From: Euprymna scolopes
Taxonomy: Eukaryota
NCBI GenBank assembly: GCA_053919585.1
Contig: CM132785.1
Length of the DNA: 64,000 nucleotides
Direction: 5' to 3' (one strand)
Shown: positions 12,396 to 55,469 of the stretch, piece by piece
Layout of the letters: every line of letters starts with the position of its first letter
How positions within the stretch are numbered: the stretch's first letter is position 1
Notes under the pieces: model-generated
The model's database searches: none
Seen by the model: the letters and a program-made list of their open reading frames with translations, nothing else
Told to the model about the DNA's origin: nothing
Translations under genes and position numbers: made by a program

Positions 12396-15300
12396 CTTTT
12401 TTTTTTTTTTACACAGTGATCATCACTTATCAAGGCCCGGAAGCCACTCAGGGATAAGGGTTATTGCAAGTACATTACGTTAGTGTGGAGATTTGATGAA
12501 GTGTTTACTTAAGGGGGCGGTTCATTAGGAATCTGTTAACATTAGACTTGAAGACATCCAAGTTGTAGTCCGGAGGGAAGCAGGCAGACGGAACAGAGTT
12601 CCACAGGCGTGCAGTTCGAAGAAAGAAGCTTTGTTCATGGAATCCGCGTTTTGATTTAGGCACAGATATAGAGTGGGGGAAATTTTTCACAGTGGATTCA
12701 GCTAGACGGGTGTTTTTCGTGAAAGATTGGCGAGGGGCGACCAGGGATTGGAGTTCAGACGAGCACCTGCCATGAAAATAACGATAAAACAAGGATAGGC
12801 TCGCAATGTCTCTTCTGTGGAAGAGGGGTTGCAGGGTAGAGAAAAGAGCATCCCCCACTAAACCACGAAGTCTATTTTGTACTCTGTCAACGCATGATAG
12901 GCTGTTTTTGGCAGCTCCTGCCCAGATATGACAACAGTATTCAATCCTTGGACGTACTTGGCTTTTATATAGATAGAGAATTGCATCAGTAGTGAGATAT
13001 CTTCTGGAGCGGTAGAAGGATCCCACCATCTTTCCAGCGACCTTGGCAACAGACTTGATGTACGTGTTCCATTTCAGATCAGGAGTAAAGGTCAAACCCC
13101 GAAGTTGTCAAAACACGGGGCCTCACCCAGACGATAGCCATCCATCACAATTGATGCCAGATGGGGATCAGAGCGTTCATGATGTACGGATAGGAGTTTG
13201 GTTTTGGATGCATTAAAGGTAACTAGCCACATCTTCCCCCACTGAACCACGCGCTCGAGATCAGAGGAGAGAGAATCAGAGAGAACTTTGTCATTTACAG
13301 CCTTTGATGTGTTGCCGTAGATGGTAGTGTCATCAGCATAGATGTCAACGAATGATTTAAGTATGTGTTTAGGGAGGTCATTGATGTAGATCAGGAAGAG
13401 AGTTGGGCCCAGGATTGACCCCTAAGGGACTCCAACATTTATATAGCAGGCCTCCGATTTTTGTCCATCTACCACTACTCTTATGAGCCTATCGCAGAGA
13501 AATGATTTAATGATTGAGAAAACATTTCCAGTTATACCGTAGCTGGAAATCTTGTGAAGTAGACCCTTATGCGATACCTTGTCGAAGGCCTTTGATATGT
13601 CAAGAGCAAGTGTCCTAGAAAGGAAGCCTTTGTCAAGAGATTCACTAATCCTGTGGGATATAACTGTCAGCACACCTGCGGTAGATCTTGCAGAGCGGAA
13701 ACCATATTGTGTGTCACTAAGAAAGTTATTCCTGCTGAGGTGGTTGACTATTTCTCTATTTAATATTGATTCCAGCAACTTACTCATAACACACAGGAGA
13801 CTTATTGGTCTGTACTGAGAGGGAGATAACTTATCACCTGAATTCTTAAATACAGGGAAAACTGATGAGGTCTTCCAGGGGGTCGGAAAGCACTTCTCCT
13901 AAAGGCAGCGCTTAAATAGTTTCGTAAGTATGGGAGCAAGTTCTGGTTGAGGCTTTTTTAACACTATAATTGGGATGCCATCAGGGCCAGTTGCTTTACT
14001 GGAATCTAGGTTTTTTATTAGCTTGGCGACCTCATGCACGGATATTTGTATGTTACCTAGCTTGTTCTGTGTTATAGGAGGAAATATGGAGAGTTGATGG
14101 CCTTCGTCGCATAGGGTAGAATTAGCTGCAAAGTTCTTTGCAATAGTTTGGCCTTGTCTGACGCTGACGAGATGACCTCTGGTCCATTGATAATGGTTGG
14201 GATAGAACGCACACTTCTGTTCAGGATCCTATTTGTTATTTGCCAAAACTGGTGGGAACCAAGCTGCTGATCAGCTACCTTGGATTTAACAGACTGGGCA
14301 TATAGCTCTCTTGCATTTTTATTTCTCTTTTACAGTGGTTGCTGGCAGTCCTGAAAGCAGCTTTAGTCTCAGTACATCTATTACGTTGGTAGCTATGGAA
14401 AAAGTAATTTCTGTGCGCGATAGCAGCAGCACATTCTGGGGAGAACCATGGCTGGCTGTTAGGTTTTTGTTGGAATTTCTTAGATGGTATGAATTGGTCT
14501 ATGCCTACAATTAACCATTCGGCCAGATCTGATACTATAGAGGACACTTCCTTTTTAAACATGGAGTGCAGAGGTAAATCAGATATGAATGTACGGAAGC
14601 TATCCCAGTCAGCCATAGAGTATCGGTATACAGTACGGTGGAGGGGTACGTCTAGAGGGTTCTTACATTTCGTTTTTATCTTAACTGATACGACGGAGTG
14701 GTCGGAGGATCCTAGAGAAGAATGAACGGTACATGAACATAGCTCAGGGGAAGTTGAGAGAAAAAGGTCTAAGAGGCTTGCATATTGATTGGGTGTATCG
14801 GGCACACGAGTGGGTTCGCGACTAATCTGAATGAGGTCATAAGCAATGGCAAAATCATGACAAAACCTCCCCTCATCATCTGTCTTATTTGAATGGGTCA
14901 GCCATTCCACGTTATGGACGTTGAAGTCACCACAGATGTGGATGTTAGCCGAGGGATGTGAAGACAGTGTGTGGTCTATTTTCTCAGATATGCTCTTAAA
15001 GATAGTAACTCCGCTGTTGTGGGGCCTATAGAGGGCAAATATAAATGCAGTGGTGTTAGCAAGTGCAACCCTGAAGCACATATAGGGTAAATTAGGATCT
15101 TCTCTAGAGATATCCCTGCCACATGGCAAGCCATCCTTAATGTAGGCACATATTCCATGCCCATGGCGATCTTGGGGGTCAGATTTAGCTGTTAAATTGG
15201 AGTATCCATTAATTATGAACTCATCTAGGGAAGTGGTCGGCCCTATTCCAGTTTCACTTAGAAATAATATGTCCGGTTTCGTCTCCTGTAATTGGGTTTC

Positions 15301-15962
15301 AACCTCTGGAAGGTTGGAACGTAGACCCCTGATGTTGGAGAAGGAGACCTGGTAGTAGGGGTCTACGCTGGAAGATGGTATTCTAGGTTTAATCGAGTTT
15401 TTATTCTGGAGATATTTCATGTTGAGGTTTTGTGGATTTGTGGAATAGGTCGGCATACTTGGTTATAGCAATACAGAGAGGGAAAGTAAGAGAGAAAAAG
15501 ACAGGAATTTTTTTTATTTGTAGCACACGAAAAGGTAAAGCCGTAACAATTACCTACTAGTATGGCATCGAGAGGTCCCACCAGAGACTACTGCATGGTC
15601 CAGATCCACTCACCAAATGGCAATACAGCAGTCCCAGTACTTTGCGCCTGCTGATAGGACAGCCTCCTTAGTGGTTAATCCAAGGTTCGGGTCCCTGACT
15701 ATCAGGCGGATAACGTCAGCCCAGACAAAACGTTTACCTCCAGCACCCTTACTAGTGACATGGCCACAAGGACAGACAGAGACAGAAAAATTTCCGACAT
15801 CTCAGACTACTGGTCACCAAGTAGTACCGACCTTTAAGCAGCTTTTTCTTCACCCTTTGTCAGAAAAATCACTCATTGAATGAGGACTGAATGACAAAAT
15901 AGGAGAAGCGAGAGTTACTGGAGCTGCCGATAACACATCCACTGTATTATCTACTCTCCATT
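12396..15962 (-). mobile_element. Full-length CR1-group (Zenon-like) LINE, family A; single APE-RT ORF, disrupted
   Basis: APE motifs SNIRGL, SETG, GDFN, LDLF, SDH (ORF 14275-15456); RT motifs QYGFR, LDISKAFD, GVP, YADD (13329-13340); C-terminal EYCCHIWAGA; 3' poly(A); ~540-nt 5' UTR with no ORF1. Confidence 0.93.
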
Positions 15963-17549
15963 ATGCTGTCAGTAAAATTCTGCGAGAAGTTTTCCTATAC
16001 TTCCGAGATCATAATATCTGAGATTCACAAATGGACACCATTTCTTTACTTTTTTTTGATCGAGTTAAAAAAAAATTTCCACCATGCTGACGTCTTGAGT
16101 GTTTGTTTGTCTTTTTCATATAATAAAGCGAAACTGTTTGAATGCAAACAACAGAAAGCAGGAAGCTTACTGGTCCCGGCTTGGCCATTGGGCTAGGATC
16201 AAACTGTAGTATCTTTTTTCATGAATTTCAAACGTTAACTATTAAATATACCTACCAACTTTATTTCGATTATTTTTAATTATATTTGCACGGCTTTTTC
16301 CTTTTATGAATATTTTTTTAATATCTGAAACCTTGTATATTCTAGAATTGCATTTAATCACGTTTGAGTTCTATACTAATGAGTATTTACTAATTATTAT
16401 AATACTTATTTACAAAAACGAAAATACTTCTTAAAGAAAATAGATTGAATGTCTCTGAAAATGCTAGATTAGGATTTGAACCTATGGTTGTGATAAATAG
16501 CGTTCCATTACTAAATACAAATGTGAAATAAATATTTGTTTACATTCGACTTTGAGAGATCATTCTTTTTATTCAGCTGGGAAACAATCCCGTAATATGT
16601 TCTACGGATTGCATGTCCATCGAAAATCTGTCTGGTCATATGAACACAGATAAATAAAGAAAATATTTTCGGTTACAGCAACAAAAAAAAAATAGATAAG
16701 ATCTTGCGTTAAATATTTTTTTTTGGGGGGGGGGAGAACAACGTTAATCTAAATCGAGTGAAATGCAATACCAATAATGAATGAACACTGAAAAACTATA
16801 AAACACTTTTTTCTGACGAAAGGGGATGTAGAGTGAAGGGAAGAAATCATCCAACTTACAAAGCAAAGAAAAGTTTTCTAATTTTAGGGAATTGTTTATG
16901 GTAGAACCTATTTGATGTTAATACAGGTTGCATTAATTAGAATTTCTCTTGTTTGTCAGGCTTAATTTTGAGACCACATAAACATCGATAAACTCGTAAA
17001 GTGAATGGTATCATAATAATAATATTTGCCCTGGTTTTCGCTTGTCATTTTCTCTTCATCATCATCCTTCTTCTCTCTTCCTGCCTCATTTCTTATCAGT
17101 TCGGTTTACGCGAATTTTTTTTTATTCGAATTCAATTATTAAATTATCAGCTAAACTTATGCGAAAGAAATCCATTTACGTTCCGCAAAAAAAGTTGATC
17201 TCATTTTTTGAAAAGTTTTCATGGAAGTATTGAAAGAAATAATAGAACCTTTTTTCAAATGTAGTTTAAACGATGAGAATTCTGTGAACCGTTTTCAAAG
17301 TGTGTGTACAGGCAAAACATCTAGCAATCCTACAATACGAAATGAACAGTATAGGAACCGTATTAGTTTTGAAGAGTTTCCTATCGAACACTCATTTTAT
17401 TAAGAAACTGGTAAATACTTATGTACCTCCTTATAAATATTTGCGCGATATTTAAAATATACTTTTATGTAATTAATTTTTTTAAAACATAAATGAATTT
17501 AGATATATTTGATTTCTGCTGCATAAAACGGTTTTGCTTTGTTAAGTGC

Positions 17550-25635: not shown

Positions 25636-28600
25636 ATTTTTTTACATAGGCATCACCACATTATCAAGGCCAAGAGGCCACTCAAGGATAAATGTTAAAG
25701 AGTGTACAGAAGACATTTGACAATATAGTAATCATTAGTAATGAAAATTCGGTAAATTTGATAACTTATATGGAATGACTCATCAAGAACTTATTTACTT
25801 TAGACTTGAACACAACCATATTGTAGTCAGCCGGAAAGCAGGAAAACGGAAGACAATTCCACAGGCGTGCAGTTCTAAGAAAGAAGCTTTGTTCATGGAA
25901 TCTCCGTTTAGGTTTAGGCACATATAAAGAGTGGGGGGAATTATTGATAGTGTTTTCAGATGGACGAGTGTTTCTTTTGAAAGTTAGGTGAAGGGGGGGA
26001 CCATAGACTGAAGCTTAGTAGAACACTTTCCATGAAAATAACGATACATCAGAGCCAAACTCGCAACATCTCTACTGTGAGATAGAGGCTGCAGGGAAGA
26101 GAAAAGGACATCTCCTACGAGGCTACAAAGTGTATTTTGAACGCAATCAAGGCAAGTCCTTTCTAGCAGCTCCTGTCGAGATATTGCACGAGTACTCCAT
26201 CCTTGGACGTACCTGGCTCTTATATAGATAGAGAATTGCATCAGCAGTGAGATATCTACCGGATCGATAGAAGGATCCCACCATTTTTCCAGTGGCCTTG
26301 GCAACAGATTTGATGTACGTGTTCCATTTAAGATCAGGAGTAATGTCAAGCCCAGAAGCTTGTAAAAACTTGAGGCCTCCTCAAGACGAGAGCCATTCAT
26401 TTCAATTGATGCCAGATGTGGATCAGAATGTTGATGATGTAAAGAGAGAAGCTTGGTTTTAGATGCATTAAAAGTAATCAGCCACTCCTTTTCCCATTGT
26501 ACTACGTGCTCAAGATCAGAGGAGAGAAAAACGGAGATACCTTGGTCGTTTACTGTCTAAGATGTGCTACCATAAATGGTAGTGTCGTCAGCATAAATGT
26601 CTACAAATGATGTAAGGGTGTGATTTGGAAGATCATTAATGTAGATCAGGAAAAGAGTTGGGCCCAGGATTGACCCCTGAGGGACACCGGTATTAATACT
26701 GTGAGCTTCTGATTTTTGCCGCTCAACTACTATGAACGTATCAGAAAGAAATGGTTTAATAATTGAGAAGACATTTCAAGCTATACCATAGCTAGTGATC
26801 TTACGAAGTAAACCTTTATGCCATACCCTATCAAAAGCCTAAGATATGTCAAGAGCAATTGTCCTAGAAAGCTTGCCTCCGTCGAGAGATTTGCTAATCC
26901 TATGAGATATAACTGTAAGCACATCTGCTGTAGATCTAGCAGAACGGAAACCATATTGAGTGTCGCTAAGAAGGTTATTTTTGCTGAGATGGTTGATTAC
27001 TTCTGCATTTAACACAGATTCGAGCAACTTACTCATGACGCACGGGAGACTTATTGGCCTGTACTGAGAGGGGGATTAGCGATCACCTGAATTCTTAAAT
27101 ACAGGGCATACTGATGAAATTTTCCAGGGAGATTGGAAACTAATCTCCTTAAGACAACGTTTAAATAGTTTTGTAAGTATGGGCGCTAGTTCAGGTTGAA
27201 GTTTTTTGAGTACTATAATTGGAATACTGTCAGGGCCAGTTTCTTTACTGGAATCAAGGTTTTTGATTAGCTTGGCAACATCACGTACAGATATACGTAT
27301 ATCACATAGCGTGTTTTCTGATACAGGAGAAAATATTTGGGGTTGGCGGCCTTAGTCGCAAAGGGTAGAATTAGCTGCAAAGTTCTTGGCAAAGAGTTTG
27401 GCTTTGTCTGATGCTGACGAGATTACCTCAGGTCCATTGATGATAGTTGGGATAGAGCACACGCTTCTGTTCAGGATTCTGTATCTATTTGCCAAAAACT
27501 GGTGGGAACCAAACTGCTGCTCAGCTACTTTGGACTTAACGGATTGAGCATACAACTCTCTTGCGTTCTTTATTACTTTCTTACAATGGTTGCTGGCAGT
27601 CCTGAAAGCGGCTTTATTTTCCATACATCTATTACGTTTGAAGCAGTGAAAAAAGTGATTTCTGTGCGAATGGCAGCAGCACATTCTGGAGAGAACCATG
27701 ACTGGCTGTAAGGTTTTTGCTGAAACTTTTTCGAGTGTATGAAACGGTCTATACCTACAATTAACCATTCCGTCTGATACTATAGAGGACGCATCCTTTT
27801 TAAACATGGAATGCAGAGGTAGATCCGATATAAATGTACGGAAGCTATCCCAGTCAGCCTTAGTGTATCGATATACTGTACGATGGAGAGGTACGTCTGG
27901 GGACTTATTATATTTCATTTTTATCTTAATTGATACAACAGAGTGGTCGGAAGATCCAAGATCCAAGAGGCGACAGAACAGAAACTGAACATAGTTCAGG
28001 GCAAGTTGTGAGAAAAAGGTCTAGTAGGCTCGCATAATGGCCGTCATTGTCGGGCGCACGGTTGGGTTCCTGAACAATCTGAGTGAGGTCATAGGCAATG
28101 GAGAAATCATGACAGAATCTCCCCTCATCATCGGTCTTGTTTGAGTTGGTCAACCATTCGAAGTTGTGAACATTGAAGTCTCCACATACGTGAATGTATG
28201 CTGAAGGATAAGCAGATAGGACTTGGTAAATTTTCTCAGATATGCTTTTAAAGATAGTAACTCCGCTATTGTGATGGGCGATAGAGAGTAAATATAAATG
28301 CAGTAGTGTGAGCTAAAGCAACCCGGAAGCACATATAGGGTACGTTAGGATCTTCCCTAGAGATGTCCCTACCATATGGAAAGCTATCTTTAATATAGGC
28401 ACATATTCCATGCCCATGGTGATCTTGAGGGTCAGATTTAGAAGTTAAGTTAGAGTATCCTTTAATTGTGAACTCATCTACGGAAATAGCCTGTCCAATG
28501 CCAGTTTCACTTAAAAATAAAAGGTCTGGTTTAGTCTCCTGTAATTGGGTTTCAACCTCTGAAAGGTTAGAACGTAGACCCCTGATGTTGGAGAAAGAGA

Positions 28601-29228
28601 CCTGGTAGTAGGGGTCTACGTTGGAAGTTGGAGAACCTGGTTTAATCGTGTATTTTTTCTTGAAACTTTTCATGATGAAATTTTGGAATATGTGGACTAG
28701 GTCGTAAGATTTACTTAGAGCAGGACAGAGAGGGGAAACTAAGAGAGAAAAAGAAACGAATCATTTTTTTTATTTGTAGCTCATGATAAGGTAAAGCCGT
28801 AACAATTACCCACTAGTATGGCATCGAGAGGCCCCACCAGAAGCTACTGCATGGTCCAGAATCCATTCACCAAATGGCAATATAGCAGCCCCAGTACTTT
28901 GCACCTGCTGATAGGACAGCCTCCTTAGTGGTTAATCCAATGTTCGGGTCCCTGACTATCAGGCGGATAACGTCAGCCCAGACAAAACGTTTAACTCCAG
29001 AACGCTTACTAGTAACATGGCTACAAGGATAGACATAGAAGCAGAAAATTTCCGCCATCTCTGCCAACTGTTCGCGCAAAATACTGCCAACCTATAAAAC
29101 AGCTTTTTCTTCTCCCTGTGTCAGAAAAATCACTCATTAAAAAATGAGGACTGAGGGACAAATAAGAAGAAGCGAGAGTAACGGGAGCTGCCGATAACGC
29201 ATCCACAATGCGTGTTCTACTCTCCATT
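25636..29228 (-). mobile_element. Full-length CR1-group (Zenon-like) LINE, family A, diverged subfamily; disrupted
   Basis: Collinear with 12396-15962 from the 5' end (AATGGAGAGTAG) to the 3' tail; APE and RT motifs present, YADD at 26584-26595. Confidence 0.93.
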
Positions 29229-30559
29229 AAAAAAAATTATTAAGTATTCTACTCATTAAAAGTCCAACACACGTGTTTAAGGGAAGGTATGGTGATAGAT
29301 TCCCCTCTCACGAACTAAAAATGAGTACAATTTCGTAATCTATTTTTGCAATCAACTTGGTAGATAAATACAAATTTATGGACGAGAAAAAAGCTAGCAT
29401 TTAATGAAACAGAAATACATAAATTAAATACTGAAATAAAATGTAGGTATTAATATTTGAATTTAAAAATAAAAAGTACGATTTATATAGAAATCACTTA
29501 TTTCAACAAAAATACTTCCGTCTCCAAAATGCAAACTGTAGTGAAGAATGTAAGTTTTAACAGCGTTCAAAAGATTTTTATTTTAAATTGTTTTTTATTG
29601 GGTCTTACTGTTCGTATATGTAATTTATCTATTGATGTATTGAGAATTTTTATTAAGATCTGTCGTCCAAATACATACATAATCTTGTTTATATGTTAAT
29701 TTTTTTGTTAACCTCAAACTAAGCATCGTTAGGCGTTGATTTATAACGGATAAAGTTGGAAAATTTGGAGCATATTATTGTTTCAAATTTTATTGTAATC
29801 TCCTCAGCCGAGGAAAGAAGGGACGGGGAGTGAATTCAAAATCAATGTGTCTGAGCGAAGTAACAATTAAATTTGAAATATTTCCGTATATTAAGAACGA
29901 TACATTTTAAGGGTGGGTACATTACGGATAGACTGAACAATCGGATTATTTTACTCTGAATGAATACGAATGCAGTAAATTCAATCGCCAACAATAGATG
30001 AACAAATATGATTGAATTACTTTCATTATCCTTAGTCTTAGCCTTGTCTTCTTTTTCTTTTTTATGTGATCTCTGGGGATAGAGACGACATGATTTCGGG
30101 ACATCCAATTATTTTTTTTAATTAATAGAATAGTAATAATGTAAACATCAATTGATCCTTAACAAAATCTTACTGAAGGAACTTGGCGATTGAAGTATTC
30201 TTTTGTTTTCATATAACTCTACTTTATGTTATATGGTGTAGACGGATGTGTGCCCTGGTGACGAACTCCCGTCATTGCGTTCAGTTTCCATATATCCTAC
30301 CACCTTACATTTTTCTATATAAATAAACTTGCATATTCTGTTACTTTCTGATTGGTCGCCTTGATCTGCTACACAACATTAGCGAAACCAAAAAAATATG
30401 CTTCGTCGCTTACGAAACAGTTGGACTTTTCTTTTCGTCTAATTCGAAACTGACAACGAACAAACGTGAACGAAATAACGCCTGTCGTAAACGAAAAAAA
30501 AAACGTATTTATACGCTGCAACCATGAACTCCGACTAAAATTTCGTCTTATTTTCTTAT

Positions 30560-44099: not shown

Positions 44100-45461
44100 T
44101 TTTTTTTACAAGGTGATCACGATTTATCAAGGCCCAGAAGCCACTCAGAATTATTGCATGTACAGTACGTTGGTGTTGGGATTTAATAAAGTGTATACTT
44201 AAGGGGGTGGTTCGTCAGGAATTTGTTTGCGTTGGACTTGAAGACATCCAGGTTGTAGTCAGGTGGGAAGCAGGCAGACGGAACAGAGTTCCACAGGCTT
44301 GCAGTTCTAAGAAAGAAGCTTTGTTCATGGAATCTACGTTTTTATTTAGGCACAGATAAAGAGTGGGGAAAGTTTTTGACAGTGGTTTCAGCTAGACGGG
44401 TGTTTTTTGTAAAAGATTGGCGAGGGGGGGGGACTAGAGATTGGAGCTAAGACAAGCACCTGCCATGGAAATAACGATAAAACAAAGATAGGATCACAAC
44501 GTCTCTTCTGTGGGAGAAAGGTTGCAGGTAAGAGAAAAGGGCATCCCCCACTAAGCCACGAAGTCTATTTTGTACTCTGTCAAGGCAGGGCAGGCTGTTT
44601 TAGCAGCTGCTGCCCAGATATGCTAGCAGTATTCCATCCTTTGACGTACTTGGCTTTTATATAGACAGAGAATTGCATCAGTAGTGAGATATCTTCTGGA
44701 GCGGTAGAAGGAACCCACCATCTTTTCAGCGACCTTGGCAACAGACTTGATGTACGTGTTCCATTTCAGATCAGGAGTAAAGGTCAAACCCAGAAGATTG
44801 TCAAAACATGGGGTTTCTCCCAGACGAGAGCCATCCATCCCAATTGATGCCAGATGGGGATCAGAGCGTTGATGATGTAAAGATAGGAGTTTGGTTTTAG
44901 ATGCATTAAAGGTAACCAGCAACGTCTTCTCCCCACTGAACCACGCGCTCGAGATCAGAGGACAGAGAATCAGAGAGAACTTTGATGTGTTGCTGTAGAT
45001 GGTCGTGTCATCAGCATAGATATCAACGACTGATTAAAGTATGTGTTTAGGGAGGTCATTGATGTAGATCAGGAAAAGAGTTGGGCCCAGGATGGACCCT
45101 TGAGTGACTCCAGCATTAATACTGCAGGCCTCTGATTTTTGTCCATCGACCACTACTCTTATGAGCCTATCAGAGTGAAATGATTTAATGATAGAAAGAA
45201 TATTTCCAGTTATACCGTAGCTGGAAATCTTGTGAAGTTATGCCATACCTTGTCGAGGGCTTTTGATATGTCAAGAACAATTGCCCTAGAAAGGGAGCAT
45301 TTGTCAAGAGATTCACTAATCCTATGAGATATAACCCTTAGCACATCTGCGGTAGATCTTGCAGAACGGAAATCATATTGCGTGTCACTAAGAAGGTTAT
45401 TTCTGCTGAGGTGGTTTACTATTTCTCTATTTAATATGGATTCCAGCAACTTACTCAGCAT
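44100..45461 (-). mobile_element. CR1-group LINE, family A, 5'-truncated
   Basis: Highly similar to 12396-13790; RT motifs and poly(A) tail. Confidence 0.92.
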
Positions 45462-48055: not shown

Positions 48056-48530
48056 AGACAGGCTCGCAACGTTTCTTCTGTCGGAGAAAGGTTGCAGGGA
48101 AGAGAAAAGGGCACCCCTCACTAAGCTATGAAGTATATTTTGAACTCTGTCAATGTAGGATAATTCTTTCTAGCAGCTCCTGTCCAAATTTGGCAACAGT
48201 ACTCCATCCTTGGACGTACTTGACTTTTATATAGATAGAGAATTGCATCAATAGTGAGATATCTTCTGGAGCGGTAGAAGGATCCAACCATTTTTCCAGC
48301 GACCTTGCCAACAGATTTGATGTACGTGTTCCATTTCAGATAAAGGGTAGAGGTCAAGCCCAGAAGCTTGTCAAAACATGGAGCCTCCTCAAGACGAGAG
48401 CCTTTCATTTCAATTAATGTGAGATTGGGATCAGAGCGTTGATGATAGAATTGTCTTTTATATGCATTAAAAGTAACCCGCCACCTCTTTCCCCATTGTA
48501 CCACGTGCTCAAGATAAGAGGAGGGAGAAT
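48056..48530 (-). mobile_element. CR1-group LINE, family A, internal fragment
   Basis: ORF 48121-48504 containing LYKSQVRPRMEYCCQIW. Confidence 0.9.
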
Positions 48531-53164: not shown

Positions 53165-54669
53165 TTTTATAGTTACATTTTTCTCCCCCTTGAATAAAGA
53201 AGATAGTGACACCAACAAGTTATTTTAACAGGTAAATAAAGAGCATAAGTCCTCAACAAATGCAAAAATGAAAAGAACGGCAGAGATCGGAAAATTTTAA
53301 TTTTATAATTTTGTTTGCATTGCTTTTTTTATTTTTATTTTATATAAACAAAGGAATTGAAAAGGGAAATAATGACAAAAATGAGAGTCTTCTAAAGTTC
53401 TCAATTGCAAAGTAGTAGGACACTAATAAAATTCTCAGAGCATCGAAATAATTTTCTCACTCAGCAGGGTAACGTATTGAGCAGAACTATAAGGGTAAAA
53501 GTCAACCAAAGTGAACGCGCTTATCCTAATGCCATTTAAATTGTGTCTGCAGCAATAAAAACACCACATAAGCCATGTAAACAGAGAAACTTAAACGATA
53601 TAGAGAATAAAAATGATTCCATCACCAACCTTTCCACTGGGTTAAATCCAGGTAAAGAATATTAATTCACATATGATGATCTCATGCTATCCATGGCCTT
53701 CTTTTTTTCCTTTTCTCTTTTCTTTTTATGCTCTTTTTCCTTGTGTACGAAAGAAACCCCACGACCCGTTAAACTTACGGCCTTAAGCCCTATTTTGTTA
53801 AGTCGAATCCACTGCTTGCAAAAATTAAGTAAATCGATGGTTTGCAAGTACACGATAATCTCGGGTCGTAGGATGTCCATCATGGGGAGATGCGTACTTC
53901 CAACTCGAGTTGAACCCAGGTTATAATTTTATTTCCGTCAGAAATAAAATATTTTTCTATTTCTTTTCGTTACAGTTGCAAGTTAGTAACTCCAAACTTA
54001 AACCCTTGTGCCATCCAATTCAGAAATCAAAAAGTCTAAGTATCTATAAAATACACCCAGACTGTTTATTCATTTCAAAACGCCCTTGTTACGTTTCTCG
54101 CATTTGCCATTGCATATCTGTCAACTATTGCAGGTTTTGACGCGATTTCCACTGTTTCTTTACCCTCGGTGGCGAGAACTCACGAGTGGAATTCCTTACA
54201 CGTTCACTGTTGCTTCAAGAGTAATTTATCCCACACGTGCCTGGTTTTGCACGTGTCCTTGCCCACACGTTAAATGAAAAGCGTTAATTTGGTTGGCCAG
54301 ATTTGTTCGCTATCCTGCACCATTTTTTTTTTATTTTTATTAAATATGATTCTTTATTTTATATCGTTTTTTGAACTCTGTGTTGTACTTACTGATATCT
54401 GTTTGTCTACAGAATGTATGATGGTACAAGGACAATATTTTTCACCATGATAGCGAAACACGTAAAAGAGTAAGAAAGAGATCGAATTCAAAACTCTATA
54501 ATTGATGTTTTCCTAATTACGAAGCTTTCACAATAAAAACTATCGCATTTCAGCCTCATAACAAAACAAATGTCACGTAATATCATACCAGTATGATTTA
54601 ATTTCGCATTGACTTATTATAAGCTTTTTGCTCAAATGTTTTATTTGGTTGTTTAAGGTATCAATTTAT

Positions 54670-54760
54670 ATATGGCATAATCACGTTGACCACAGGTTCC
54701 CGTTAGATCACCGAAGTTAAGCAATGTTTAGCCTAGTCAGTACTAAAATGGGTGACCATC
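54670..54760 (+). pseudogene. 5S rRNA-derived sequence (pseudogene or SINE3 head)
   Basis: CACGTTGA..GGTTCCCGTTAGATCACCGAAGTTAAGCAA..AGTACT..ATGGGTGACC matches roughly 5S positions 10-92; the 5S 3' end is missing. Confidence 0.85.
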
Positions 54761-55469
54761 TCAGCGTTGTTTCCAGTCGTCTAACACTTCTCCTTGAACT
54801 GGGCTCAATCAGTGTCTATTTATTAAAGGTGTTGGAGAATTGCGCAACCCTTGCCTCACAATTACCAGCGAAGCTACCCTTACAGGGTAGGATTCATTGT
54901 CTCTTGAGACTGGACGTATACAGCGATCAATTTAAAAAAAAAGTGGCCCTATCACATTTTGCTTTGGAACTCTTAAAATACAGACATTAAACTACAGTAT
55001 AGTTAGCAAATAGAAAATATAAAAATAATATAAAGTAAACGAAAATTATAATTGTTTTCTGATTATTTCTATTGGTCATTAGGAAAGCAATTAATCAGTA
55101 TATATACTTTTTAAGGCAGAATTATGTCTTCACTAAGCTTATTATTGTAACATTTAGACTACATTGTAAGGAATATGTACCTAAACACATGTTTATATGA
55201 ACTCAAGATATACATAAATATTTTATTTTCATTTATAATTTTATTTGGGTATATGCATTTAGATACACTTAATGGGTCTGTGTTCTTCTTATATGCGGAA
55301 GTGATGTTGATGAAAATTAATTAATTTGAGTCTTGAAGGTACTATTTGTATTATTTCTTGTACTGTTTGCACACAAGCATTCAGGAATCAATGTTCAAAG
55401 GTTTATTAGGGAAGCCACTAGTAGTATATCAATTATATAATGATATAATAATTAATATTATGTATGTAA

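What the first reader, a model, noticed from the sequence alone, without database searches (positions are those of the whole stretch)
15457..15962. ORF1-less LINE with a structured 5' UTR core more conserved than its coding sequence (candidate IRES-like or other cis-acting RNA)
Seen: the two full-length family A LINEs (UTRs 15457-15962 and ~28710-29228) differ at only ~14 positions across a ~225-nt core (~15515-15740, hand count), while the adjacent APE coding DNA is visibly more diverged. The differences mostly preserve pairing on the element strand. (a) A 13-bp stem GGGACTGCTGTAT/ATGCAGTAGTCTC (plus-strand 15623-15635 with 15584-15596) has a true A-U to G-C swap in copy 2, plus one new mismatch. 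(b) The inner hairpin CCATTT/GAGTGG becomes CCATTT/GAATGG. (c) CGCCTGATAG/CTATCAGCAGGCG and AGGTAA/TTACCT change only to G-U pairs. (d) A 5'-terminal hairpin is rebuilt from different sequence (GATAATACA/TGTGTTATC vs ACGCAT/ATGCGT). An A-tract and a long pyrimidine tract follow, then the shared AUG (15420 / 28673). Inference: a multi-domain RNA under selection sits where ORF1 normally would. It could be an IRES (pyrimidine tract before AUG, as in picornaviral IRESs), an internal promoter/packaging element, or a ribozyme.
Basis: partly seen in the sequence, partly recalled or inferred. Interest (0 to 1): 0.75.

Follow-up and report, generated by a model that had tools for sequence, protein, structure and literature searches.

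The report
Conserved folded RNA in LINE leader
The flagged stretch is a real folded RNA domain of about 200 bases in the untranslated leader of a jumping gene (LINE); distant relatives keep its shape through matching base changes, it matches no catalogued RNA family, and its job, perhaps helping ribosomes reach the gene, is untested.

Summary
Two family-A LINE copies on the minus strand share a leader core that is 92-96% identical, against about 80% in the ORF.

The core (window 15755-15556; copy 2 29012-28812) is a four-way-junction RNA, here called Domain II, followed by a small hairpin. It lies upstream of homologous single-ORF APE-RT genes on 16 independent sequences, with protein identity from 70% down to roughly 30-45%.

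- **Covariation:** about 90% of cells are paired, against 37-50% in slid controls. 39-41 of 58-66 pairs carry compensatory changes, and no shuffle out of 500 reached this.
- **Strand:** G:U pairs outnumber A:C pairs 135 to 19, so the sense RNA is the strand that folds.
- **Known families:** Rfam 15 has no match, and the region does not code for protein.

- One proposed stem register is wrong.
- Four pair-breaking differences, and half of the "swap", are private mutations of copy 2.
- The "5'-terminal" hairpin belongs to a second module (Domain I: helix, rebuilt hairpin, possible pseudoknot). Domain I is not HDV-like.
- Many copies extend further upstream into tandem promoter-like monomers.

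Function is inferred only. An IRES-like translation element is my leading reading (about 0.35-0.4). Protein binding, RNA stability and ribozyme readings remain open.

Earlier notes of this scan describe what look like related modules elsewhere in this genome.

The parts
15556..15755 (-). Domain II, copy 1: a four-way-junction RNA. Closing helices H1 15755-15745/15566-15557 and H2 15741-15736/15576-15571. Small hairpin Hs about 15733-15712. Arm A is H3 15708-15703/15650-15645, H4 15695-15689/15664-15656 and H5 15685-15679/15673-15666. Arm B is H6 15639-15623/15596-15579 and H7 15620-15615/15611-15606.
   Evidence: RNAalifold and covariation counts. Helix coordinates. The single-sequence MFE reproduces the fold. 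The CM R1 hit scores 211.6 bits.
15533..15555 (-). Hairpin III, directly 3' of Domain II (copy 1).
   Evidence: Helix 9: 8 pairs, 6 with compensatory changes. Also present in the MFE fold.
15756..15963 (-). Domain I, copy 1: P1 15958-15953/15915-15910; family-specific rebuilt hairpin 15950-15943/15937-15930; candidate pseudoknot P2 15928-15923/15842-15837; a long hairpin lies between P1 3' and P2 3'.
   Evidence: The same order of elements was read in 11 families. P1 and the hairpin covary. P2 is positionally consistent but not significant by shuffling.
15421..15532 (-). Spacer between hairpin III and the AUG: an A-tract, a long pyrimidine tract, then a G-poor A/C-rich run.
   Evidence: Sequence. 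The same composition pattern recurs in most of 12 families without sequence conservation.
12505..15420 (-). APE + RT coding region of copy 1. The AUG is at 15420-15418. This copy is broken into pieces by stops.
   Evidence: ORF list and Pfam hits. Intact 972-aa versions exist in L034 and L035.
12397..12410 (-). Poly(A) tail at the 3' end of copy 1.
   Evidence: Sequence. The same 3' end plus A-tail occurs in deletion derivatives L005 and L024.
28812..29012 (-). Domain II, copy 2 (A2 subfamily).
   Evidence: CM R1 hit of 193.6 bits. Helix map. It has 7 private differences from the A2 majority.
28789..28811 (-). Hairpin III, copy 2.
   Evidence: Alignment with copy 1.
29013..29229 (-). Domain I, copy 2. 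Its hairpin is rebuilt from different sequence.
29230..29589 (-). Upstream leader of copy 2: a poly-T tract, a unique part and a remnant of a 276-bp promoter-like monomer.
   Evidence: This region is 89% identical to the upstream region of other A2 copies. L043 carries 3.9 tandem 276-bp monomers. Sequence.
28671..28673 (-). Shared start codon of copy 2.

Best explanation
**What it is (shown).** The flagged core is Domain II of a structured leader RNA of a young, abundant, single-ORF APE/RT LINE.
- It is about 200 nt and forms a four-way junction: a two-part closing helix, a small hairpin with a conserved YUGGRYUG loop, and two long irregular arms.
- The arms carry near-invariant loop and bulge bases: GAUAGU, GGAGGCUG, CAGC and UGCCA.
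- A short hairpin follows. Then come about 90-155 nt (most families; outliers 42 and 231) of pyrimidine-rich and then G-poor sequence, and then the AUG.
- It folds on the sense RNA and is kept by purifying selection across LINE lineages whose proteins are only about 30-70% identical.

**How it most likely works (inferred).** It acts in cis on the LINE mRNA as a cap-independent, IRES-like translation element. It would recruit or position the small ribosomal subunit downstream of a 490-700-nt leader full of AUGs. The unstructured tract before the AUG would serve as the landing zone.

**Odds.** I put about 0.95 on the conserved structured RNA and about 0.35-0.4 on the translation mechanism.
For: **Structure**
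- RNAalifold found 66 pairs, 40 of them with compensatory changes.
- On a structure-blind MAFFT alignment of 11 sequences, 89.9% of cells are paired against 37-50% when partners are slid. 41 of 66 pairs have double changes against 12-19. No shuffle out of 500 reached this.
- The 16-sequence CM alignment gives the same picture.
- G:U cells number 135 and A:C cells 19. The sense MFE is -77 kcal/mol and the antisense -56.

**Linkage to the LINE**
- Domain II was found upstream of the homologous ORF in 11 of the 13 distinct protein-ascertained contigs.
- It was also found in 8 pattern-ascertained metagenome contigs. All 8 carry the homologous LINE ORF or a fragment of it just downstream, with HSP identities mostly 27-47%.

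**Conservation**
- Searches give the identity figures.
- Across families, BLAST detects only this part of the leader; only L067 and L068, the closest relatives of A1, align further 5'.

**Translation reading**
- Leaders carry 6-11 upstream AUGs, close to the shuffle expectation of 8-12, so they are not depleted.
- Positions -100 to -36 are 51-85% pyrimidine. The last 35 nt are 0-9% G in 11 of 12 families.
- Spacing from Domain II to the AUG is mostly 92-156 nt.
- There is no ORF1.
- L094, a relative with an intact ORF, lacks Domain II but keeps Domain I. This suits an accessory expression module better than a core reverse-transcription signal.
- Precedent: HDV-like ribozymes at LINE 5' ends have been reported to promote translation initiation (Ruminski et al. 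2011; I saw only the citation in PMC8501958). A review raises IRES-type initiation for non-LTR elements (PMC3894237).
Against: - No functional assay exists, and nothing in Rfam's IRES models matches.
- The AUG lies 42-231 nt from the domain, and AUGs occur inside the spacer. Direct placement as in HCV or cripavirus IRESs is therefore unlikely.
- Non-depleted upstream AUGs and a G-poor start region are also compatible with shunting or leaky scanning.
- Two internal-deletion derivatives without an ORF keep the whole leader, so retention does not need translation in cis.
- Strong conservation of loop bases would equally suit a conserved protein partner or catalysis.
- The single-sequence folding z-score is unremarkable (-1.18).
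- The source organisms of the metagenome contigs are unknown, so the number of independent lineages is uncertain.
Confidence: 0.4

Rival explanations
1. Domain II is an RNP-assembly platform. It would bind the element's own APE-RT protein (or a host chaperone) in cis, standing in for the missing ORF1p, or coordinating second-strand steps as the R2 5' RNA does.
For: - The element lacks ORF1.
- Conserved irregular arms with invariant bulges look like protein-binding sites.
- Deletion derivatives L005 and L024, which have no ORF, keep the full leader plus about 150 nt of the 3' end.
- R2 proteins are known to bind structured 5' RNA (abstracts, e.g. PMC12222951).
Against: - Loop bases stay nearly invariant while the protein drops to roughly 30-45% identity. 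A self-encoded partner would be expected to co-diverge.
- L094 has an intact ORF and Domain I but no Domain II.
- The two derivatives could keep the leader simply because the deletions were internal. Their copy number was not measured.
Confidence: 0.25
2. Domain II is an RNA stability, nuclear-export or silencing-evasion element for an intronless transcript that may be uncapped.
For: - It is a conserved sense-strand structure in an intronless retroelement RNA.
- Conserved loops would suit a conserved host factor.
- The domain is modular: present in some lineages and absent in others.
Against: There is no resemblance to known transport elements and no Rfam hit. The consistent pyrimidine-rich then G-poor tract between the domain and the AUG is not explained.
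Confidence: 0.12
3. Domain II, alone or with Domain I, is a self-cleaving or otherwise catalytic RNA of an undescribed class.
For: - Covarying helices around near-invariant junction and loop bases are typical of ribozymes.
- 11 of 30 A1 copies start within 2 nt of one site, 3-5 nt upstream of Domain I's first helix.
- LINEs of other clades use HDV-like or twister ribozymes at their 5' ends (PMC4035085, PMC8501958).
Against: - No hit to any ribozyme model at E up to 10 in 16 homologues.
- Domain I has no room for P3/L3 and no conserved C before P2 3'.
- The pile-up of 5' ends is seen in A1 only; 0 of 30 A2 copies show it.
- Domain II lies about 200 nt inside retrotransposed copies, so the template RNA is not cut there.
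Confidence: 0.07
4. There is no RNA function. The high A1-A2 identity would reflect recent recombination or gene conversion of the leader, or a DNA-level promoter element.
For: The core is 95-97% identical between subfamilies whose flanks are 72-85% identical. LINE 5' ends are known to be swapped between lineages (general knowledge). An antisense B-box-like word lies in arm A (seen in the sequence).
Against: Conservation with compensatory changes reaches lineages with roughly 30-45% protein identity. The G:U excess is strand-specific. Neither is expected for a DNA signal or for a recent swap. ARAGORN finds no tRNA-like gene.
Confidence: 0.03

Closest known systems
HDV-like ribozymes at LINE 5' ends (R2, RTE, Baggins, L1Tc Pr77)
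   Same: A structured, pseudoknotted RNA at the front of a non-LTR retrotransposon. These ribozymes are reported to define the RNA 5' end and to help translation start (PMC4035085; Ruminski 2011, cited in PMC8501958). Domain I here has a P1-like helix that encloses the 5' strand of a possible pseudoknot, followed by a long hairpin.
   Different: There is no P3/L3/P1.1 and no conserved catalytic C in the J4/2 position. No CM hit. Element copies start 3-5 nt upstream of the helix, not at its first base. Domain II has no counterpart in these ribozymes.
Viral IRESs (picornavirus types I/II; HCV-like type IV)
   Same: A large multi-helix domain in a long leader rich in AUGs, followed by a pyrimidine tract, a spacer and the AUG. 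Loops are conserved while helices covary.
   Different: No sequence or CM similarity to any Rfam IRES family. The distance to the AUG is variable. The shared 9-mer GCCUGAUAG with the HCV IIIe region (recalled from memory) is within chance. Activity is untested.
R2 5' UTR protein-binding pseudoknot RNA
   Same: A conserved folded RNA in the 5' region of a single-ORF non-LTR element. It could bind the element's protein.
   Different: R2 belongs to a different clade (restriction-like endonuclease, site-specific). No similarity was detected. Here the loop sequences are conserved far more deeply than is usual for a self-protein partner.
Mouse L1 monomeric 5' UTR
   Same: Tandem promoter-like monomers (276 bp x 3.9 in A2; 99 bp x 2 in A1) lie upstream of a non-repeated leader. 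Copy number and 5' truncation vary.
   Different: The sequences are unrelated. Here the non-repeated part holds two conserved structured RNA domains, and the element has no ORF1. Promoter activity of the monomers is inferred only.

Membership tests
APE-type non-LTR retrotransposon (LINE), single ORF | Apurinic-type endonuclease plus reverse transcriptase in one ORF, a 3' A-tail, and many dispersed 5'-variable copies | tested here: met
   - Pfam PF03372/PF14529 and PF00078 hit an intact 972-aa ORF.
- Poly(A) tail at 12410-12397.
- Thousands of candidate copies in the genome.
- No ORF of 60 aa or more upstream in L043 and L003; L045 has only 68-84-aa ORFs in its upstream 1.5 kb, which includes non-element flank.
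Evolutionarily conserved structured RNA | Base pairs maintained by compensatory substitutions above controls | tested here: met
   about 90% of cells paired against 37-50% slid. 39-41 pairs have double changes against 11-19. No shuffle out of 500 reached this.
HDV-like self-cleaving ribozyme | Nested double pseudoknot with a P3/L3 hairpin between P2 5' and P1 3', P1.1, and a catalytic C in J4/2 | tested here: not met
   Only 4-7 nt separate P2 5' from P1 3' in 10 of 11 families. No conserved C precedes P2 3'. No hit to the Rfam HDV-like models.
HDV-like self-cleaving ribozyme | Self-cleavage immediately 5' of P1 | not testable with these tools
   Genomic 5' ends of A1 short copies lie 3-5 nt upstream of P1. 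A cleavage assay is needed.
Other small ribozymes (hammerhead, twister, twister-sister, hatchet, pistol, hairpin, VS, GIR1) | Match to the family covariance model | tested here: not met
   No such match at E up to 10 in the two window copies or in 14 homologous loci.
Catalogued IRES families (Rfam) | Match to a family covariance model | tested here: not met
   The only hit was a chance-level ODC_IRES match in the spacer of copy 2 (17 bits against a gathering score of 44, E = 7.4). It is absent from copy 1 and from all homologues.
IRES (functional class) | Cap- and end-independent initiation in controlled reporters; binding of 40S or initiation factors | not testable with these tools
   Only circumstantial sequence features are available.
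tRNA / tRNA-like or other host small RNA | Detection by ARAGORN or by Rfam models | tested here: not met
   ARAGORN found 0 genes. Rfam gave no SRP, snRNA, 5S or tRNA hit in the leader.
Exonuclease-resistant RNA (xrRNA), considered for Domain I | Ring-forming junction plus pseudoknot that stalls 5'-3' exonuclease a few nt upstream | not testable with these tools
   The topology is loosely compatible and A1 5' ends pile up 3-5 nt upstream. The P2 pseudoknot is not significant by shuffling, A2 shows no pile-up, and no Rfam xrRNA model matched.

The most novel reading that the evidence does not exclude
The leader is a two-part expression system of a kind not described for LINEs. Domain I would be a pseudoknotted module that creates or protects a defined, probably uncapped, RNA 5' end just downstream of the promoter monomers, acting as a new self-cleaving motif or as an exonuclease-stalling fold. 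Domain II would be a new class of IRES, conserved across animal LINE lineages, that lets this RNA be translated without a cap.
Probability: 0.15. Interest if true: 0.9.

Novelty: new variant of a known kind. Interest (0 to 1): 0.7.

Why it matters
Large structured RNAs with dozens of covarying pairs are rare outside the classic families, and few are known in eukaryotic transposons. This one is linked to one widespread LINE lineage, is absent from Rfam 15, and comes with natural sequence diversity ready for structure and function work.

If it drives cap-independent translation, it would be a compact, covariation-validated IRES from an animal genome rather than a virus. Claims of such non-viral IRESs are disputed. 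It would also show how LINEs without ORF1 express their protein.

If instead it binds the reverse transcriptase, it would be a handle for cis-preference and for engineering RNA-templated insertion.

In either case it supports a new RNA family model for annotating these elements.

Tried and rejected
- **Rfam.** Searches at gathering and at E up to 10 on the window, both leaders and 14 homologous loci gave nothing in the leaders.
- **tRNA.** ARAGORN found none.
- **Coding potential of the core.** Most sequences have stops in all three frames, and no frame is open in all 16.
- **Antisense folding.** It is weaker (-56 against -77 kcal/mol) and G:U far exceeds A:C.
- **HDV-like reading of Domain I.** Rejected on architecture.
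- **P2 pseudoknot.** Shuffling the downstream region gave a best-helix p of 0.14-0.99 per sequence and a combined p of 0.79. P2 rests only on positional consistency and a few compensatory variants.
- **Intron reading.** A GGUAAG-like word after Domain II plus a pyrimidine tract suggested an intron. The GU is not conserved, the word lies in covarying hairpin III, and retrotransposed copies keep the region.
- **Antisense B-box-like word in arm A.** There is no A box at tRNA spacing, and the strand test goes against it.
- **TATA-driven start at AATGG in A1.** The TATA-like word lies about 49 nt upstream with variable spacing.
- **Short versus long A1 copies.** The tree is star-like and unresolved (8 changes against a shuffled mean of 7.9), so it does not say whether short copies are a lineage.
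- **Target-site duplication of copy 1.** None is evident.
- **Candidate counts.** Counts for Domain I, Domain II and the ORF (766, 1861, 1085) are not comparable enough to infer Domain-I-only elements.
- **L079.** No Domain II upstream. It is a single 1x contig and is uninformative.

Full report
**Setting**

The window is part of a 5.9-Gb AT-rich animal genome. Earlier notes of this scan call it a mollusc; I did not verify that.

Two copies of one LINE family lie on the minus strand.
- Copy 1 runs from 15963 to a poly(A) tail at 12410-12397.
- Copy 2 runs from about 29589 to about 25637.
- Both ORFs are broken.
- Young genomic copies have an intact single ORF of 972 aa with an AP-endonuclease and a reverse transcriptase. 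They have no ORF1.
- The two copies represent two abundant young subfamilies. A1 has at least 1861 first-look candidates and A2 at least 3291. Within-subfamily identity is 96-99%.

**The observation**

A pairwise alignment gives 92-96% identity over 15760-15560. Most of the ORF and the neighbouring leader give about 70-89%.

The 200-nt core differs at 12 positions between the copies. Seven of copy 2's bases there are private mutations of that decayed copy. Among them are all four changes that break pairs and the A-to-G half of the "true swap". At subfamily-majority level only about six positions differ.

The two-copy covariation argument, however, was weak on its own.

**Deeper sampling**

A protein search found hundreds of relatives at 43-70% identity, mostly on 3-5-kb marine metagenome contigs.

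I fetched the contigs of 12 of these proteins.
- BLAST and a covariance model found the core upstream of the ORF in L067-L070, L073-L078, L080 and L095.
- L071 and L072 begin too close to the ORF to show a leader.
- L079 (a single 1x contig) and L094 had no match.

A pattern built from near-invariant bases found 13 JGI metagenome contigs. Eight of them are true matches. In all eight, the domain is followed by a homologous APE-RT ORF or a fragment of it. In seven of them the HSPs are mostly 27-47% identical to A1; the eighth, L091, is 66% identical.

The source organisms are unknown.

**Structure of Domain II**

RNAalifold on a plain MAFFT alignment of 11 sequences predicts the following:
- a long-range closing helix in two segments;
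- arm A, made of three stacked helices with conserved bulges and a UARC-type apical loop;
- arm B, a 17-bp helix and a 6-bp hairpin;
- a following hairpin III.

Of the 66 predicted pairs, 40 have compensatory changes.

| Test | Alignment | Cells paired | Pairs with double changes | Covariation score | Shuffles reaching it |
|---|---|---|---|---|---|
| Named structure | MAFFT, 11 sequences | 89.9% | 41 of 66 | 0.47 | 0 of 500 |
| Partners slid 1-3 columns | same | 37-50% | 12-19 | about 0.1 | n/a |

The 16-sequence model-based alignment agrees.

A fourth element is a 3-6-bp hairpin with a conserved YUGGRYUG loop. A hairpin forms in this segment in all 16 sequence folds, in the homologous register in most of them, and also in the MFE fold of copy 1. 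This makes the core a four-way junction.

G:U cells outnumber A:C cells 135 to 19, and the sense strand folds better than the antisense. The sense RNA is therefore the folded species.

Most sequences have stops in all three frames, and no frame is open in all of them.

In (c), the covariation supports CGCCUG with CAGG-CG. GAUAGU and CAGC are near-invariant internal-loop bases.

**How conserved is it?**

- Across 55 pairs of intact elements, Domain II identity averages 64% with gaps counted.
- ORF nucleotides average 62%, and codon positions 1+2 average 73%.
- Domain II exceeds the ORF in 38 of 55 pairs, most clearly among the closer relatives.
- Across families the rest of the leader is not alignable; only L067 and L068 align beyond the core.

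**The rest of the leader**

*Domain I.* The first ~200 nt, from AAUGG, contain these elements in the same order in 11 families:
- a helix P1 that covaries, as GAGAGU, GGGGGU or GUGGUA with their complements;
- a hairpin rebuilt from unrelated sequence in each family;
- a junction strand that can pair with a site about 55-85 nt before Domain II;
- a long hairpin.

The pseudoknot is positionally consistent but not significant by shuffling. The module lacks the P3/L3 and the J4/2 cytosine of HDV-like ribozymes.

*Upstream of AAUGG.* Many copies continue upstream.
- 28 of 30 A2 copies and 12 of 30 A1 copies carry a poly-T tract, a stretch of roughly 100-130 nt that shows shared motifs between A1 and A2, and tandem monomers.
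- The monomers are 276 bp x 3.9 in one A2 copy and 99 bp x 2 in one A1 copy. The arrangement resembles mouse L1 promoters.
- Eleven of 30 A1 copies start within 2 nt of AAUGG. No A2 copy does.
- Short and long A1 copies are not separated on an unresolved tree.

The "5'-terminal hairpin" is thus terminal only in the short form. What makes that end (a start site, processing or protection) is open.

**Function**

- The strand-specific covariation excludes a purely DNA signal and a mere recent swap.
- Known RNA families are excluded at the sensitivity of Rfam 15.
- For translation: leaders of 490-700 nt carry 6-11 AUGs, about as many as chance predicts. A pyrimidine-rich and then G-poor tract precedes the AUG in most families, without sequence conservation. 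Spacing is mostly 92-156 nt.
- L094 keeps Domain I and an intact ORF but has no Domain II. The domain is therefore a modular accessory.
- Against translation: spacing varies and AUGs occur in the spacer. Two ORF-less deletion derivatives keep the leader. Nothing has been assayed.
- I rank IRES-like translation first (about 0.35-0.4). Next come a protein-binding or RNP platform (0.25), stability or export (0.12), a ribozyme (0.07), and no RNA function (0.03).

**Comparison and novelty**

The closest known things are these:
- HDV-like and twister ribozymes at LINE 5' ends (PMC4035085, PMC8501958);
- R2's 5' RNA;
- viral IRESs;
- mouse L1 monomers.

Membership in each RNA family fails where it could be tested. 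This looks like a new RNA family within the known category of retrotransposon leader structures.

Earlier notes of this scan (s1-279901, s1-292408) describe a ~200-nt conserved fold and a pseudoknotted head in LINE leaders elsewhere in this genome. I could not compare the sequences, but they probably describe the same or sister modules.

Noticed in passing
L043:230-1301; L003:791-991; window 29230-29589: Full-length copies carry tandem monomers upstream of the structured leader (276 bp x 3.9 at 97% in an A2 copy; 99 bp x 2 in an A1 copy), then a variable poly-T tract. The layout resembles mouse L1 promoter monomers. The last ~100-130 nt before the poly-T show shared motifs between A1 and A2.
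   Followed up: partly
L001-L030 5' junctions (window 15963): 11 of 30 A1 copies begin within 2 nt of AAUGG, 3-5 nt upstream of Domain I's first helix, while 0 of 30 A2 copies do. This is a subfamily-specific discrete RNA 5' end of unknown cause (start site, cleavage or exonuclease stalling).
   Followed up: partly
L005:1318-2043; L024:1352-2036: Two independent internal-deletion derivatives keep the whole leader up to the first ~10 codons, plus ~150 nt of the 3' end and an A-tail. They may be non-autonomous elements. Their copy numbers were not measured.
   Followed up: no
L094:1130-1364: A relative (46% protein identity, intact 992-aa ORF) has Domain-I-like motifs, with the AUG about 45 nt after them and no Domain II. 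It is inserted in a fragment that looks like an LTR-retroelement pol gene.
   Followed up: partly
L074:200-390; L080:400-575; L068:1-300; L073:1-365: Other families carry further conserved sequence upstream of Domain I. It includes repeats of a GGGTAGGAA-like word and a second GGGAGTAG motif shared by L074 and L080. This may be duplicated head modules.
   Followed up: no
window 12411-12470 and 25645-25690 (minus strand): The 3' UTR ends in a short GC-rich hairpin (GGC..GCC) that differs between A1 and A2 while keeping its pairing. It is a candidate recognition site for the reverse transcriptase.
   Followed up: no
P0135 (cluster of P0032): One relative of this animal LINE protein is deposited as a hypothetical protein of a Cytophagales bacterium MAG. 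This is most likely eukaryotic contamination of the bin.
   Followed up: no
window 54668-54785 (+): A 5S rRNA gene scores 42.3 bits against a gathering score of 38.
   Followed up: no
window 44100-45457 and 48057-48530 (minus strand): Two 5'-truncated fragments of the same LINE family (88% and 83% identical to copy 1's RT region). The 88% fragment may represent a further subfamily.
   Followed up: no
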